Virus record (IMG/VR): IMGVR_UViG_3300049460_000312
Coordinates: 186,001-250,000 of that record
Length of the DNA: 64,000 bases
Strand: one strand, 5' to 3'
Shown: piece by piece, positions 26,956 to 45,582 of the stretch
Position numbering within the stretch: the stretch's first letter is position 1
Layout of the letters: every line of letters starts with the position of its first letter
Notes under the pieces: model-generated
Told to the model about the DNA's origin: nothing
What the model saw: only the letters and a program-made list of their open reading frames with translations
Databases searched by the model: none
Translations under genes and position numbers: made by a program

Positions 26956-27873
26956 TCACTCTTGCGGGAAGGTCGTTTTGTTAAACGCCAGGTACGTGTT
27001 CAGATGCACCCGCGCCACTTCCACCGCACCCGACCAGATAAGCTGGTAGGCTCGGTCCATGTGTTCCCACGCCTTGAGCGCCCGCACGCGTTCCTGATCG
27101 CGCAGATCCCAGTGGCGGTTGAGCAACACCTGCACTGACGACTTGTAGATGCCGTAGACCGTATCCGCCAGGGCATCCGGCTTATGGATCAGGTGATGCA
27201 CGATCACCGTCGCCGGATCGAGTTCAGGCAGCGGGCCGAACACTTCGCCGTGCTTGTCAAAATCATGCAGGAAGCGGGTCACCGCCGCGCGCGTGTGCTC
27301 ACCCTGGATAAGCGTGATCAGACGCGAGACTTCGCTGACGATCGACGGAATGCGCAGCTGGATGAAAGCGTCCTCGCCATCGACCCACAAGGCAAAGCGA
27401 ATCACCACGTCCCAGTTCAGTTCCGTGTTCAGGCGCTTCATCGTGATCGAGCTTTCCACCCGCACCTGCGCTTTGGAATCAGCCCGGCGCTGGCGCAGGT
27501 ACTCGTCGATGGTGATCAGCCAGTTGTCGAGCAACTGCGGATCAGCGATCAGCCGGTCCGTCAACTGCAGGCCCGCCGGCAAGAGCTTCTTCTGCACGTA
27601 GTTCTCGACCCGGTGCAGGGTGTGCAGGAAGTTATCCCGCTCGTAGAACGCGTTATACAGCACGGTGCCGGGTTCTTCGGCCAAGTGCATACCAATCCAG
27701 CGGTCTTGGTTAAAACCGCTGTCCAGGGCTGCTGTACGCAGTCCCTTGGCGGCACTGTAATGCCGGGGCGCGCGCTGGTTGCTGAACAACGAATGCACTT
27801 CGACCGAAGGGCCAAAGCACAAAGTTTTTTCCAGGAAATCCTGGAGGGAGAGGGTAGTGGCGACGGCTTCCAT
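26956..27873 (-). CDS. Hypothetical protein
   Basis: 305 aa with coding-like bias. Confidence 0.7.
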   Translation of the reverse strand: MEAVATTLSLQDFLEKTLCFGPSVEVHSLFSNQRAPRHYSAAKGLRTAALDSGFNQDRWIGMHLAEEPGTVLYNAFYERDNFLHTLHRVENYVQKKLLPAGLQLTDRLIADPQLLDNWLITIDEYLRQRRADSKAQVRVESSITMKRLNTELNWDVVIRFALWVDGEDAFIQLRIPSIVSEVSRLITLIQGEHTRAAVTRFLHDFDKHGEVFGPLPELDPATVIVHHLIHKPDALADTVYGIYKSSVQVLLNRHWDLRDQERVRALKAWEHMDRAYQLIWSGAVEVARVHLNTYLAFNKTTFPQE

Positions 27874-27885
27874 GATGTCCTTGAA

Positions 27886-28194
27886 TCAATGCTTTCTGAG
27901 ATAGACGAGATTCCTTTTGCAACTGAGCATGGCCGCGGCACCGGCTTCTTTCGGTGTAAGCGAGGGGCTCTCGTAGATCGAGTCTGCGATGCCTTTAATC
28001 TCAATCGCGGAGGTGGGTCGATCGGCATAGACTTGATCGACCCCTGCGTAAATGTTACCCAACGGTACGCTGCGGTCACGACCTTCAGCGATATGCACGG
28101 CGAGGTCATGCAGGGCAGCACACACTTCACTTTGAGCGAAGGCCTGTGTACTGAGCACCAAACCGAGCGCCAGCGCTGCGAGCAGCTTTTTCAT
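27886..28194 (-). CDS. Small secreted protein
   Basis: Signal peptide MKKLLAALALGLVLSTQAFA and two Cys; start corrected to 28194. Confidence 0.7.
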   Translation of the reverse strand: MKKLLAALALGLVLSTQAFAQSEVCAALHDLAVHIAEGRDRSVPLGNIYAGVDQVYADRPTSAIEIKGIADSIYESPSLTPKEAGAAAMLSCKRNLVYLRKH

Positions 28195-28280
28195 TGTTGT
28201 TTCCCTTAGCGTAAGATAGTGACAGGCGTATTTATTTTTCTTTTTGTTCTTGAGTAAAAACGAAAAGAAAAATAAAAGAG

Positions 28281-28880
28281 GCATTTTGCCCACCCTCTAA
28301 CCACTCGGTCTTACTCTAGCTGCTCCGCGGAGTGGCTAGTGTCAAGTGAGTGCGTTGGGGTGGGCGTATGCGCTTTTTGAGTGACGCGGATCTCTCAGCA
28401 AATCTCCTAGCGGCATCTCCATCGGTTCCAGCTTGATGGCGCGGACTAGGTCTCAGTGCGTATTAAGTCTCTGTCAAAGACACCACACAGGCGTCTATAT
28501 CTCGATTCTGGAAGCGTGTACTTACCAGGCGGAGGGCTCGTCAGTTCCCTCGGTATGACGTCAGGCGGCCGACGTACGCAAGTATGTCTGCAATCGGGAG
28601 CCTGGCGTGAGCGACGCATGTAAGAACCAGGTAAGTATAGGTCAGCTAATGCTCACTATGCCTGTCAGCCCTTTCTCTGGCGCATCGCTGCGTTTCAGAG
28701 ACCATCGGTCGCAGGTGCTCACGCTGCGAGGCACGATGGTGGTGGTGATGAGCGACAGACCACGCATCGTACCGTAGCACGATGCGGGTGAACAGAAGTG
28801 ACCTACAGAAATCCCAGCTCAGATGCCAGTACCGCAAAAGGCTAGCGTATCCGTAGATTGTTATTCTCCTTGTTCTTGCT
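28281..28880 (+). ncRNA. Candidate large structured RNA (about 600 nt)
   Basis: No credible ORF; many long helices with G-U pairs on the + strand (see findings). Confidence 0.55.
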
Positions 28881-28945
28881 TGTTGTTGGCGATTGGATTC
28901 GCTTGGTTCATAAAAGATAAGGGGCCGTAATTTCTTACAGCTATC

Positions 28946-29110
28946 CTACTTGATGCCGAAGAAGCGCTTGGCGAATTCGCTCGGCTCGTCAGAGTCGGGG
29001 ATATCAAACGACGCAACAGGCGGTTGAGCACGAAGGCTATCGAAGAGTTCTTCGAACTCCGCCTTCGCTTCTGGATTGATGCCAGACGGAGGGGCCTCAG
29101 GCTTAACCAT
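28946..29110 (-). CDS. Small hypothetical protein
   Basis: ATG overlaps the upstream stop. Confidence 0.5.
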   Translation of the reverse strand: MVKPEAPPSGINPEAKAEFEELFDSLRAQPPVASFDIPDSDEPSEFAKRFFGIK

Positions 29111-29357
29111 TATTTTCTTCCTTCGCTTGACTGAGAAAGACATCGCGCGCCCGTTCAACACGCTCGACACGCCACTGGTTCAGTAGCAGGTCGACATTCA
29201 AGGTGCTTGGCACCGGTGTGAGTGCCCTCGGGACTTCTTCAATCACTTCACACTTTGCCGGTTGCGGCTTGTTGCGCAACACATCCAAGAAGCGATGTGC
29301 CTGGAGTGCATCAGAGGTCGCTGAAATAGAAGACACTGGCAAGAGGCGAATGGTCAT
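29103..29357 (-). CDS. Hypothetical protein
   Basis: RBS GGAG upstream of the ATG. Confidence 0.5.
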   Translation of the reverse strand: MTIRLLPVSSISATSDALQAHRFLDVLRNKPQPAKCEVIEEVPRALTPVPSTLNVDLLLNQWRVERVERARDVFLSQAKEENNG

Positions 29358-36590: not shown

Positions 36591-36681
36591 TGTCTGAAAC
36601 TAAGTCCAGATCACCATCCAAGCCAGTTGCTCACAACAAGGACACCGTGCTGTATTTTCTAATTACTTACAACTATCCTAC

Positions 36682-37089
36682 TCAGAAATATATCTGGATA
36701 GAATGACCGTCTGCTTCCCGGTGCAGTGTATCGGTATTATGCAACCGCATCGAGACCACGCCGTGACAGCCCTTGGCATTGTCCTTCGCCCATTGGCTTG
36801 TGACCTTCTCAAAGCCCGCGTACGTGCAGAACCACAGGCGTTCGTCACTGTTGTTGACGGTCTTGATCACGCCCTTCTCGTAAAAGGCTTCAGAAGTCAC
36901 GACGTCGAAGATATCGCTGACTTCCGGACTCATCTCGGGATCGGTATCACCCCAGTAAGCGAGTAGGATAGCGATGATCAAGCGAAAGTTATCGCGTAGC
37001 TCAGCCTGCGAGCGAGCGCGACCGACGCCGTAGAGCAAAGCCCGTGTGTAGATCTTGTTGTTCGGTGTGATAAGGTGAAGGAAAGCCAT
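36682..37089 (-). CDS. Hypothetical protein
   Basis: ORF in an operon with the HTH gene. Confidence 0.6.
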   Translation of the reverse strand: MAFLHLITPNNKIYTRALLYGVGRARSQAELRDNFRLIIAILLAYWGDTDPEMSPEVSDIFDVVTSEAFYEKGVIKTVNNSDERLWFCTYAGFEKVTSQWAKDNAKGCHGVVSMRLHNTDTLHREADGHSIQIYF

Positions 37090-37513: not shown

Positions 37514-37686
37514 CGTTCTTCCTCATGTGGGTGCATGCGATAAAATAACCCTCCGAGTAAGAATTAGCAGCGCGCCCGCATTCTGTAGCCGCCACAACCC
37601 AATCCCGGTGGCTAGTTACATTCCATTTAACCTGGGTCGCTGTTCAGCTCGTTGGTTGAGGAAGTGCCGGTAACGCCCGCAGTACC

Positions 37687-37756
37687 TGCTCTGGTAGTAG
37701 ATTGGAATAACGCCGGTTACGACCCGGAAAAGTGGGTTCGATTCCCATCCAGGCAG
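37687..37756 (+). tRNA. tRNA-Arg(ACG)-like element, degenerate, no encoded CCA
   Basis: T-arm GTGGG-TTCGATT-CCCAT; anticodon arm CCGG-TTACGAC-CCGG; acceptor TGC(T)CTGG/CCAGGCA with a bulge; weak D-stem. Confidence 0.5.
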
Positions 37757-37765
37757 TGTCACAGC

Positions 37766-45413: not shown

Positions 45414-45489
45414 TGGCTCCCCGGGTTGGACTTGAACCAACGACCAACGGATTAACAGTCCGCTACTCTACCGACTGAGCTACCAGGGA
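45414..45489 (-). tRNA. tRNA-Asn(GTT) with encoded CCA
   Basis: TCCCTGG/CCGGGGA acceptor, D-arm GCTC-AGTCGGTA-GAGT, anticodon loop CT-GTT-AA, T-loop TTCAAGT. Confidence 0.95.
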
Positions 45490-45505: not shown

Positions 45506-45582
45506 TGGCGCGGCGTAGGGGACTTGAACCCCTGACCCCTGGCGTGACAGGCCAGTACTCTAACCAACTGAGCTAACACCGC
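45506..45582 (-). tRNA. tRNA-Asp(GTC) with encoded CCA
   Basis: GCGGTGT/ACGCCGC acceptor, anticodon loop CT-GTC-AC, T-loop TTCAAGT. Confidence 0.95.

What the first reader, a model, noticed from the sequence alone, without database searches (positions are those of the whole stretch)
28281..28880. About 600-nt ORF-free region folding into many long helices: candidate novel large ncRNA
Seen: a bulged rod of about 90 nt (GCCCACC 28288 with GGTGGGC 28359; CACTC/GAGTG; CTAGC/GCTAG), a long-range helix TACTTACC 28519 with GGTAAGTA 28630 enclosing AGGC/GCCT, ACCATCG 28701 with CGATGGT 28734 enclosing TCGCAG/CTGCGA, and CGCATCGT 28763 with ACGATGCG 28779. G-U pairs fall on the + strand, antisense to the flanking genes, and AT-rich spacers bound the region. 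In an otherwise densely coding genome this is unlikely to be filler. No RNase P, tmRNA, SRP or intron core was recognised. Inference: a large structured RNA of unknown function, analogous to phage-borne GOLLD or ROOL classes.
Basis: partly seen in the sequence, partly recalled or inferred. Interest (0 to 1): 0.7.

Follow-up and report, generated by a model that had tools for sequence, protein, structure and literature searches.

The report
Structured RNA cassette with hidden gene
The "ORF-free" stretch of this Ralstonia jumbo phage is a conserved cassette that most likely holds a small hidden protein gene, an unusually well conserved folded non-coding RNA segment of about 275 bases and a long hairpin terminator; it is not one 600-base antisense RNA.

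Summary
The region is conserved in the only known relatives: Ralstonia phages FLC4-3B, FLC1-1B, RP12 and RP31, plus soil-metagenome variants. It splits into three parts.

- **Rod, 28281-28371.** The 90-nt rod plus a U-rich tract matches the phiKZ-family terminator (hairpin + TTAT) that recurs across this genome.
- **Core, 28372-28645.** This is truly non-coding, because relatives differ by 1-nt indels. Window and FLC are 91% identical here against 70-77% in flanking genes. Two blocks of 25 and 19 nt are invariant, and helices covary (12 double changes against 0-1 in slid controls). Its folding energy is no better than shuffles.
- **Hidden ORF, 28646-28858.** A minus-strand frame of 70 codons is open in all lineages. 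It follows a conserved AAGGAG, a 7-8 nt spacer and AUC. All five length differences are multiples of three, and pN/pS is lowest or near-lowest of the six frames. The product has no homologue.

The strand of the folded RNA cannot be settled from G-U counts. Gene orientation, terminators, the Shine-Dalgarno site and the ORF favour the minus strand, sense to the neighbours. There is no Rfam match and no link to GOLLD or ROOL. No RNA-seq run was listed. This is a new, clade-restricted structured RNA of unknown function.

The parts
28924..28941 (-). Invariant hairpin GCUGUAA-GAAA-UUACGGC just after the stop of the upstream - strand gene. It is terminator-like for that gene and contains AAATTAC, which resembles the phiKZ middle-promoter motif AAanTTACc. 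It marks the right edge of the conserved cassette.
   Evidence: GTAATTTCTTACAG is invariant in all five phage sequences. The terminator scan hit is at 28941-28924. Similarity to the metagenome lineages ends at 28940. The exact motif is unique in the genome, with a near copy at window 36671. The phiKZ promoter motif is from PMC4666361.
28909..28912 (-). TATG about 18 nt downstream of the AAATTAC motif. It is a possible phiKZ-type transcription start (G at 28909). It is present in the window only; FLC has TATAG and RP12 has TATTTG.
   Evidence: Sequence. The TATG start-site rule is from PMC4666361. That transcription starts here is an inference.
28866..28871 (-). Shine-Dalgarno AAGGAG, followed by a 7-8 nt spacer and then AUC.
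   Evidence: The + strand TTCTCCTT is invariant in all lineages. Spacing was read from the sequence.
28646..28858 (-). Cryptic small ORF of 70 codons, from AUC at 28858-28856 to UAG at 28648-28646. The product is basic, with a predicted N-terminal helix, and has no homologue. The mRNA is highly structured; hairpins 28678-28695, 28710-28728 and 28763-28786 covary.
   Evidence: - The frame is open in the window, FLC4-3B, FLC1-1B, RP12 and RP31.
- Length differences are 3, 6, 6 and 15 nt, and 96 versus 99 nt in one metagenome lineage.
- pN/pS is 0.51, 0.79 and 0.58. It is the lowest of six frames in two comparisons and second lowest (0.79 against 0.76) in window-RP12. The window-FLC dN/dS of 0.39 compares with 0.29 for the neighbouring gene.
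- The chance that a given frame is open is 0.06-0.12 per lineage.
- GC3 is the highest codon position in all three lineages.
- Four of nine metagenome substitutions are synonymous and none creates a stop.
- No homologue was found.
- AlphaFold2 predicts helices at pLDDT 71.
- Folding z-score is -4.8.
28372..28645 (.). Conserved non-coding structured core; strand unresolved, - favoured. It has two domains: 28382-28476 (nested helices) and 28519-28637 (closing helix TACTTACC.AGG/CCA.GGTAAGTA).
   Evidence: - Window and FLC are 91% identical over 28281-28640, which also takes in the rod, against 70-77% for flanking genes.
- The flanking protein is 66% identical to FLC and 34% to RP12.
- Relatives differ by 1-nt indels.
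- Compensatory changes are listed.
- In the 28515-28643 domain, 12 pairs changed on both sides against 0-1 in slid controls, and 0 of 500 shuffles reached this.
- Folding z-scores are -0.4/-0.1.
28571..28595 (.). Invariant 25-mer GACGTACGCAAGTATGTCTGCAATC. On the + strand it forms a 7-bp hairpin with a GCAA tetraloop and one G-U pair. The - strand model folds this block differently.
   Evidence: helix 4 never varies, so the pairing is untested.
28606..28625 (.). Second invariant block CGTGAGCGAC(N)GCATGTAAG. It is mostly unpaired in the consensus models.
28281..28371 (-). Bulged rod of about 90 nt, closed by GCAU/AUGC and GCCCACCC/GGGUGGGC. It belongs to the genome-wide hairpin-plus-TTAT terminator family but is three to four times longer. 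It is U-rich on both sides, so it may terminate in both directions.
   Evidence: z is -5.7 on + and -5.6 on -. Three compensatory pairs separate the window clade from RP12. The metagenome tip changes C-G to U-A. The terminator scan hit is at 28291-28279 on the - strand.
28257..28280 (-). U-rich tail CUCUUUUAUUUUUCUUUUCGUUUU after the rod. It corresponds to the TTAT part of the phiKZ terminator motif, and RP12 has the canonical CTCTTATGCCGCTG at this place. It marks the left edge of the cassette.
   Evidence: Similarity to metagenome lineage X13/X15 begins at 28257. The phiKZ motif BCCYCCCCHWWDGGGRRGGBYTTATKYYGT is from PMC10914365.

Best explanation
The region is one conserved cassette, 28257-28941, read on the minus strand in the same sense as all neighbouring genes.

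Its order on that strand is:
1. An invariant AAATTAC-containing hairpin that ends the upstream gene and probably carries the cassette's promoter.
2. A Shine-Dalgarno site followed by an AUC-initiated ORF of 70 codons, embedded in a strongly folded mRNA.
3. A non-coding structured domain of about 275 nt under much stronger sequence constraint than any neighbouring gene.
4. A 90-nt rod with a U-rich TTAT tail that acts as a phiKZ-type intrinsic terminator.

Shown:
- Conservation of the region, covarying helices and the non-coding nature of the core.
- The coding-like evolution of the right third.
- The sequence match of the rod's tail to the terminator family.

Inferred:
- That the minus strand is the functional RNA.
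- That AUC starts translation.
- That the hairpin motif is a promoter.

Proposed working: the transcript is a dual-function RNA of about 650 nt. Its 5' part yields a small basic protein at a low, regulated level, because of the weak start codon and the folded initiation region. Its 3' domain is the main selected product. The long invariant stretches, mostly unpaired in the models, would bind a conserved partner, either a protein or an RNA of the phage or of Ralstonia. The rod terminator would protect the 3' end.
For: - **Neighbourhood.** The neighbouring ORFs with family matches, and all genes annotated around the homologous gap in FLC and RP12, lie on the - strand.
- **Cassette edges.** Similarity to independent metagenome lineages stops at 28257 and 28940, that is at the U-tail and at the hairpin.
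- **Terminator-like sites.** The scan finds them on the - strand at 28941-28924 and 28291-28279.
- **Terminator motif.** The published phiKZ motif is a hairpin plus TTATKYYGT. The window genome holds 93 TATGCCG sites. Of 250 TATKYYG sites, 106 follow a hairpin, against 15.5% of random positions. RP12 carries the exact motif after the rod.
- **Small ORF.** SD + AUC are conserved and the frame is open in all lineages. All five length differences are multiples of three. pN/pS is lowest or near-lowest of the six frames.
- **Core.** It is 91% identical between window and FLC, against 70-77% in the flanks, and carries 1-nt indels.
- **Covariation.**
Against: - No transcript data: no RNA run was listed.
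- G-U against A-C counts do not favour the - strand. Five G-U pairs that are invariant across clades exist only on the + strand. Single-sided changes in the ORF part and in the proposed long-range helix 28509-28517/28845-28853 are all of the + type, 5 against 0.
- The invariant GCAA-tetraloop hairpin forms only on the + strand.
- AUC is a rare start codon, and neither protein search found any homologue of the small protein.
- The TATG after the promoter-like motif is not conserved in FLC or RP12.
- The core's folding energy equals that of shuffles.
- Only three to five independent lineages are available.
Confidence: 0.5

Rival explanations
1. One reading: a + strand structured RNA, antisense to the neighbours and to the small ORF. 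It would start just after the rod, at the invariant GTATG at 28366-28370, and run to the hairpin at 28924-28941. It would act as an independent ncRNA or as an antisense regulator of the small gene.
For: - GGGCGTATGC is invariant in every lineage and holds a phiKZ-type TATG start motif.
- The invariant GCAA-tetraloop hairpin with an internal G-U forms only on +.
- U-G pairs close both ends of the rod's basal helix in all lineages.
- The long-range helix 28509-28517/28845-28853 has three G-U pairs on +, one A-U to U-A swap in FLC, and two wobble-to-Watson-Crick exchanges in a metagenome lineage.
- The + folds are 9 kcal/mol more stable for the rod and for the 28515-28643 domain.
Against: - The + strand is G/T-rich, and shuffled + sequences are more stable by the same margin.
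- The TATGC next to the rod is also explained by its pairing with the invariant GCAU, as in the many palindromic terminators of this genome.
- On the + strand the rod is followed by a U-run, so it would stop + strand transcription from upstream before it reaches the core.
- No + strand terminator with a U-tail lies at the right end.
- A-C intermediates, which are wobbles on the - strand, are as common as G-U in the core, for example 28394-28465 C-G, C-A and U-A.
Confidence: 0.22
2. The whole 28281-28860 stretch is non-coding RNA on the - strand. The open frame and the AAGGAG are by-products of RNA-level constraints, and no protein is made.
For: - There is no ATG, GTG or TTG start shared by the lineages.
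- No protein homologue exists anywhere.
- Hairpins inside the frame covary while the amino acids change non-conservatively.
- The bias toward third codon positions is weak, 25/17/17.
- Folding z-score is -4.8.
Against: - All five length differences are multiples of three, while 1-nt indels are frequent in the adjacent core.
- The same frame is open in three diverged lineages, at 0.06-0.12 chance each.
- pN/pS is lowest or near-lowest in that frame, and dS matches the neighbouring gene.
- The Shine-Dalgarno site sits at ideal spacing.
- This part evolves at the pace of the neighbouring proteins (71% identity), not of the core (91%).
Confidence: 0.13
3. The core is a cis-acting leader or attenuator for the downstream - strand gene, the 305-aa protein family conserved in all three phages. 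A sensing domain would choose between the rod terminator and an alternative small hairpin (GGGCA-AAA-UGCCU).
For: A structured domain directly precedes a terminator and then a conserved gene. An alternative hairpin overlaps the rod's 3' arm on the - strand.
Against: - In the window an unrelated 102-aa gene lies between the cassette and the 305-aa gene, and metagenome lineages have other flanks.
- An AT-rich region of 80-90 nt, which could hold a separate promoter, separates the terminator from the next gene.
- There is no match to any riboswitch or leader family.
Confidence: 0.1
4. The element works as DNA, for example as a replication origin or packaging site whose hairpins form in single-stranded or cruciform DNA.
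For: Helices are almost purely Watson-Crick and the wobble evidence is symmetric between strands. These phages are circularly permuted headful packagers, so they need a pac site somewhere (PMC11530567).
Against: - There are no iterons or tandem repeats, and no GC-skew turning point here.
- The promoter-like motif, Shine-Dalgarno site, ORF and terminator architecture explains the layout.
- Invariant G-U positions would be mismatches in DNA.
Confidence: 0.05

Closest known systems
Dual-function (coding plus regulatory) bacterial RNAs such as Staphylococcus aureus RNAIII/hld, SgrS/SgrT and SR1/SR1P (from established knowledge)
   Same: One transcript of a few hundred nucleotides would carry a small ORF in its 5' part and a more strongly conserved multi-hairpin non-coding domain in its 3' part, ended by a terminator hairpin.
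   Different: There is no sequence or model similarity. The transcript itself is not demonstrated and no target is known. The ORF is larger (70 codons) and lacks a canonical start codon. The host is a jumbo phage.
phiKZ-family intrinsic terminators (hairpin followed by TTATKYYGT; PMC10914365)
   Same: The rod is a G+C-rich hairpin flanked by GCAU/AUGC and followed on the - strand by CTC-TTTTAT-TTTT (the exact TTATGCCGCTG in RP12). The same motif recurs about 100 times in this genome.
   Different: The stem-loop is about 90 nt long instead of about 25. It is bulged and conserved in sequence across genera.
Large phage-borne structured RNAs GOLLD and ROOL (Rfam)
   Same: Phage-encoded, non-coding, multi-helix, function unknown.
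   Different: No covariance-model match even at E<=10. The non-coding core is about 275 nt rather than 500-800 nt. It occurs in one small clade only.
Type I toxin-antitoxin loci (hok/sok-like)
   Same: A small ORF in a highly folded mRNA with poor translation-initiation signals and conserved mRNA structure elements that show covariation.
   Different: The peptide is not a hydrophobic membrane peptide. No antisense promoter or antisense RNA has been shown. The conserved RNA lies 3' of the ORF and is far longer.

Membership tests
GOLLD / ROOL / other Rfam large RNAs, RNase P, tmRNA, group I and II introns, riboswitches | Match to the family covariance model | tested here: not met
   At gathering thresholds cmscan finds only three tRNAs in the window. 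At E<=10 over 28000-29200, the only hits overlapping the claimed 28281-28880 span are the ends of the AT-spacer matches and one weak microRNA-type hit on the rod (mir-1260b, 28279-28370, E 7.9). Nothing lies within the core or the ORF part. Nothing lies inside the element in FLC4-3B or RP12. ARAGORN finds no tmRNA.
Self-splicing intron | Interrupts a gene whose exons join into one reading frame | tested here: not met
   The flanks are separate small genes that differ between lineages.
Structured non-coding RNA (generic) | Base pairs kept through compensatory changes in homologues | tested here: met
   RNAalifold finds 41-44 pairs with double changes. In the 28515-28643 domain, 12 pairs changed on both sides against 0-1 in slid controls, and 0 of 500 shuffles reached this. 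In the unbiased test on single-sequence folds, 55-69% of double-changed pairs are kept, against about 35% in slid controls.
Structured non-coding RNA (generic) | Not protein-coding | tested here: met
   Holds for 28281-28645 only. There are five 1-nt indels between window and FLC at 91% identity, further 1-nt indels in the metagenome lineages, and stops in all frames.
Structured non-coding RNA (generic) | Folding energy below that of shuffled sequence | tested here: inconclusive
   The rod gives z -5.7 and the 28515-28643 domain -3.1, but the 28372-28645 core gives -0.4/-0.1.
Structured non-coding RNA (generic) | A transcript exists | not testable with these tools
   No RNA run was listed for this sequence. 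Only DNA metagenomes hold it.
Protein-coding gene (28646-28858, - strand) | Frame open in all homologues and indels in multiples of three | tested here: met
Protein-coding gene (28646-28858, - strand) | Excess of synonymous change in the frame | tested here: met
   pN/pS is 0.51, 0.79 and 0.58. It is the lowest of six frames in two comparisons and second lowest (0.79 against 0.76) in window-RP12. The effect is modest and rests on 61-68 codons. Four of nine close-variant changes are synonymous.
Protein-coding gene (28646-28858, - strand) | Canonical start codon (ATG/GTG/TTG) behind a ribosome-binding site | tested here: not met
   Only AUC follows the conserved AAGGAG. FLC has a stop four codons upstream, and RP12 has no TTG. 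AUC is a permitted but rare table-11 start.
Protein-coding gene (28646-28858, - strand) | Recognisable protein relatives | tested here: not met
   No hit in the 5.8-billion-protein word search, among 1.84 billion HMMER representatives, or in PHROGs and Pfam.
phiKZ-type intrinsic terminator | G+C-rich hairpin directly followed by YTTATKYYGT on the transcribed strand | tested here: met
   Sequence level only. After the rod on the - strand the window reads CTCTTTTATTTTTC, FLC reads TATTTATTTTTTTCG, and RP12 reads CTCTTATGCCGCTG. Termination itself was not tested.
phiKZ-type middle/late promoter | AAanTTACc about 24 nt upstream of a TATG start site | tested here: inconclusive
   AAGAAATTAC is invariant in all lineages. 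A TATG 18 nt downstream is present only in the window. The motif has only a few near copies in the genome.

The most novel reading that the evidence does not exclude
A new family of phage regulatory RNA in nucleus-forming Ralstonia jumbo phages. It would be a transcript of about 650 nt whose highly conserved folded 3' domain, with 25-nt and 19-nt invariant blocks, binds a conserved host or phage partner or has catalytic activity. The same transcript would also encode an AUC-initiated microprotein, possibly its own binding partner. Alternatively, the functional molecule is the antisense + strand RNA closed by the long-range helix 28509-28517/28845-28853.
Probability: 0.25. Interest if true: 0.7.

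Novelty: new member of a known kind. Interest (0 to 1): 0.5.

Why it matters
Little is known about non-coding RNA in phiKZ-like, nucleus-forming jumbo phages beyond a few small RNAs found by transcript mapping.

- This is a non-coding element kept at 91% identity between phages whose neighbouring proteins are only 66% identical. Blocks stay invariant out to a genus where those proteins are 34% identical. Something sequence-specific and important to this phage clade must act here.
- FLC4-3B and RP12 are cultured phages of a crop pathogen that are studied for biocontrol, so the element can be tested directly.
- The case also shows that a start-codon-based ORF scan can miss a small gene, and that a genome-wide terminator family can look like part of a 'large RNA'.

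Tried and rejected
- **More homologues.**
  - Exact-pattern scans of IMG/VR found only RP12 plus chance 17-mer hits.
  - Scans of JGI metagenomes found two chance hits inside coding regions.
  - Scans of GTDB genomes found none with the first pattern and two probable chance hits with the second, which were not examined.
  - Searches with the flanking protein found only RP12 in IMG/VR and only FLC and RP12/RP31 among phage records.
  - blastn with the invariant core found only the same five records.
- **Covariance model R1 (28515-28643).** It recovers the positives at 122-150 bits. It finds nothing in Burkholderia phage FLC9, RSL2, RSF1, FLC6 or Xoo-sp14, and nothing in the loci holding the chance hits.
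- **RNA-seq.** No RNA run was listed.
- **Strand call from G-U against A-C, tetraloops and A/U content of unpaired positions.** There is no decisive asymmetry.
- **Targets.** The phage genome holds no complementarity or repeat of 12 nt or more beyond about twice the chance level, and no match is longer than about 14 nt.
- **Replication origin.** There is no GC-skew turning point.
- **Neighbouring genes.** All are PHROGs of unknown function, so they give no clue.
- **Hammerhead, T-box, group I and II cores.** I considered these from sequence resemblance and rejected them for lack of any model hit.
- **Another genetic code for the core.** Rejected, because 1-nt indels between close relatives exclude coding under any code.
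Full report
**Context.** The window is bases 186001-250000 of a 283-kb virus record with terminal repeats.
- Its major head protein is 92% identical to that of Ralstonia phages FLC1-1B and FLC4-3B and 84% to RP12/RP31 (genus Ripduovirus, phiKZ-related). The next relative, Burkholderia phage FLC9, is at 43%.
- Neighbouring ORFs with family matches, and the genes annotated around the homologous gap in FLC and RP12, lie on the minus strand. They have no known function.

**Check of the observation.**
- No ATG/GTG/TTG ORF longer than 63 aa lies between 28195 and 28945.
- The 600 nt fold better than dinucleotide shuffles: z -2.47 on + and -3.68 on -.
- The signal is uneven. The rod 28278-28374 has z -5.7/-5.6 and the domain 28515-28643 has -3.1/-2.7. 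The part 28646-28865 has -4.8 on the minus strand. The segment 28372-28645 as a whole has only -0.4/-0.1.
- Rfam gives only three tRNAs at gathering thresholds. At E<=10 it gives only chance-level hits at the left edge of the region, and nothing inside the element in relatives.

**Homologues.**
- blastn finds the region in FLC4-3B and FLC1-1B (82% over 28251-28874). It finds a 130-nt piece in RP12/RP31.
- In all four records the place is an unannotated gap of about 920-940 nt at the same syntenic position. The one exception is a plus-strand call in RP31, which is probably spurious.
- Soil and rhizosphere DNA metagenomes hold further variants.
  - Lineages X6 and X7 lose similarity exactly at 28940.
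  - A more distant lineage, X13/X15, keeps 28257-28597, 28668-28728 and 28828-28940. Its flanks are unrelated, and the two internal stretches of 70 and 99 nt are replaced by 72 and 96 unlike letters.
- The conserved unit is therefore 28257-28941.
- Further scans of IMG/VR, JGI metagenomes, GTDB genomes and phage records added no homologue.
- A covariance model of the best-conserved domain found nothing in five more distant jumbo phages.

**Three parts with different evolution.**
- **Left and middle, 28281-28640.**
  - Window and FLC are 91% identical, against 70-77% for flanking genes.
  - The adjacent 305-aa protein is only 66% identical to FLC and 34% to RP12.
  - Against RP12 the region is 56% identical overall, but GACGTACGCAAGTATGTCTGCAATC and CGTGAGCGAC-N-GCATGTAAG are invariant.
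  - Window and FLC differ by five 1-nt indels here. The metagenome lineages add more. No frame can be coding.
- **Right, 28649-28858.** Window and FLC are only 71% identical, which is the pace of the neighbouring genes.

**The right third behaves as a small gene on the minus strand.**
- Stop-to-stop frames in the window, both FLC phages and RP12/RP31 align as one frame of 67-70 codons. They share an N-terminus (I-Y/F-G-Y/F ... LSWGFWR), a C-terminus (ERA.RHSEK) and the same UAG.
- Upstream, AAGGAG is invariant. It is followed by 7-8 nt and AUC. FLC has a stop four codons before the AUC, and RP12 has no nearby ATG, GTG or TTG behind a ribosome-binding site. AUC is therefore the only shared start candidate.
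- Distances between invariant anchors differ by 3, 6, 6 and 15 nt, and by 96 against 99 nt in X13/X15. All five are multiples of three.
- A first-order Markov null gives a 0.06-0.12 chance that a given frame of this length is open in one lineage.
- Window-FLC dN is 0.29 and dS 0.75 (ratio 0.39). The flanking gene has 0.23 and 0.77.
- pN/pS in this frame is 0.51, 0.79 and 0.58. It is the lowest of six frames in two comparisons and second lowest (0.79 against 0.76) in window-RP12.
- GC3 is the highest codon position in all three lineages.
- Nine substitutions in close metagenome variants include four synonymous ones and no stop.
- Points against: the third-position excess is weak at 25/17/17. 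The peptide has no homologue in any library. AlphaFold2 gives two helices at pLDDT 71 from two sequences, which is weak support.
- I put translation of this ORF at about 0.85.
- The same stretch also keeps RNA hairpins.
  - 28710-28728 changes A-U to G-C and G-C to C-G in RP12.
  - 28678-28695 swaps two pairs between window and FLC.
  - 28763-28786 is a hairpin at the same place in the window and FLC through swapped pairs. In RP12 I found one only by eye.

**The core is a structured, non-coding element.**
- RNAalifold finds 41 (plus) and 44 (minus) pairs with compensatory changes.
- A less biased test folds one sequence alone and asks whether pairs whose two sides both changed still pair in the other clade. 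It gives 22/40 and 20/29 on the plus strand, and 20/37 and 22/35 on the minus strand. Slid controls give about 35%.
- For the domain 28515-28643, 92% of cells pair, against 26-44% when partners are slid. Twelve pairs changed on both sides against 0-1, and no shuffle of 500 reached this.
- The closing helix TACTTACC.AGG/CCA.GGTAAGTA becomes ATCTCAC.TCA/TGA.GTGAGAT in RP12.
- The domain 28382-28476 has eight compensatory pairs, and one metagenome lineage changes A-U to G-C at 28421-28437.
- The two invariant blocks cannot be tested for pairing because they never vary.

**The rod is a terminator-type hairpin.**
- The genome holds 93 copies of TATGCCG, most of them just after a G+C-rich hairpin. 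Of 250 TATKYYG sites, 106 follow a stem of 6 bp or more, against 15.5% of random positions.
- This is the conserved phiKZ terminator, a hairpin plus TTATKYYGT, described from transcript-end mapping (PMC10914365).
- The rod is closed by GCAU/AUGC like these elements. On the minus strand it is followed by CTCTTTTATTTTTC in the window and by the canonical CTCTTATGCCGCTG in RP12.
- It is also followed by a U-run on the plus strand, so it may terminate in both directions.

**The right edge.**
- The invariant CTGTAAGAAATTAC hairpin sits directly after the stop of the upstream minus-strand gene and scores as terminator-like.
- It contains AAATTAC, close to the phiKZ middle-promoter motif AAanTTACc, which lies about 24 nt before the start site. 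In the window a TATG, the phiKZ late start motif, follows 18 nt downstream (PMC4666361).
- The TATG is not kept in FLC or RP12. The motif has only a few near copies in the genome, one of them at window 36671 with the same preceding TAGGATAG. The promoter reading is a lead, not a result.

**Strand.**
- In helices predicted on both strands, G-U and A-C (a wobble on the other strand) are equally rare.
- Over my curated helices I counted 3 single-sided changes of the plus type against 5 of the minus type in the rod and core (28281-28645). I counted 5 against 0 in the ORF part plus the long-range helix.
- Invariant G-U pairs exist only on the plus strand. The path C-G, C-A, U-A at 28394-28465 is a classical wobble path only on the minus strand.
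- GNRA loops occur on both strands: GCAA on plus, and GAAA and GCGA on minus.
- The plus strand is G/T-rich.
- Unpaired positions show no A/U bias.
- The strand therefore rests on context. Gene orientation, the Shine-Dalgarno site and ORF, both terminators, and the coincidence of the cassette edges with these signals all read on the minus strand. I estimate minus 0.6-0.65, plus only 0.2, both 0.1 and DNA-level 0.05.

**Mechanism.**
- Most likely this is one minus-strand transcript of about 650 nt. It has a weakly initiated small ORF in a folded 5' part and a strongly constrained structured 3' domain, and it ends in a long terminator.
- The closest architectural analogy is a dual-function RNA such as RNAIII.
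- The long invariant stretches, mostly unpaired in the models, argue for a sequence-specific partner. None was found in the phage genome.
- The function remains unknown.

- Transcript: untested.
- Energy: better than shuffles for the whole region and the rod, but not for the core.
- Peptide or base pairs: in the left two-thirds homologues conserve base pairs and no peptide. In the right third they conserve both a reading frame and hairpins.

Noticed in passing
whole genome; e.g. window 23030, 26916/26949, 31230, 33771 (- strand): A genome-wide family of G+C-rich hairpins is followed by (T)TTATGCCG, often flanked by the complementary CGGCATAA so that the element is palindromic. It matches the published phiKZ terminator motif. 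There are 93 TATGCCG sites, and 106 of 250 TATKYYG sites have an upstream hairpin.
   Followed up: partly
window 27889-28194 (-) and 28949-29110 (-): Two small genes directly flank the cassette and are absent at this place in FLC and RP12. One encodes 102 aa (phrog_2315, N-terminus like a signal peptide) and the other 54 aa. Metagenome lineages have yet other flanks. Small genes seem to be swapped in and out at the cassette's edges.
   Followed up: partly
window 36650-36690 (-): A second copy of the motif TAGGATAG-YTGTAAG-WAATTA lies after another gene's stop. It resembles the motif at the cassette's right edge, but the downstream sequence is unrelated. It may be a shared promoter or terminator signal.
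   Followed up: no
window 28231-28276: An AT-rich inverted repeat (TTTATTTTTCTTTTTG ... CGAAAAGAAAAATAAA) lies between the cassette and the next gene. It caused the only chance-level Rfam hits and is not conserved in FLC or RP12.
   Followed up: partly
L005:2779-3066 (+) (RP31 ORF103): RP31 has an annotated 95-aa ORF on the + strand inside the element. The equivalent stretch is not annotated in RP12, and in the window and FLC clade this stretch carries 1-nt indels and no + frame of comparable length is open. The call is probably spurious.
   Followed up: partly
window 27184-28209 (+): A 341-aa ATG ORF lies on the + strand, antisense to the 305-aa gene that has PHROG and phage homologues. It is a long shadow ORF that a naive gene caller would prefer.
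   Followed up: no
window 28737-28751 (-): The window's copy of the small ORF has a run of five histidines (CAT CAC CAC CAC CAT). The run is absent in FLC and RP12 and is broken in metagenome variant X7.
   Followed up: no
window 37686-37757 (+), 45414-45489 (-), 45506-45582 (-): Three phage tRNA genes: Arg-ACG, Asn-GTT and Asp-GTC.
   Followed up: no
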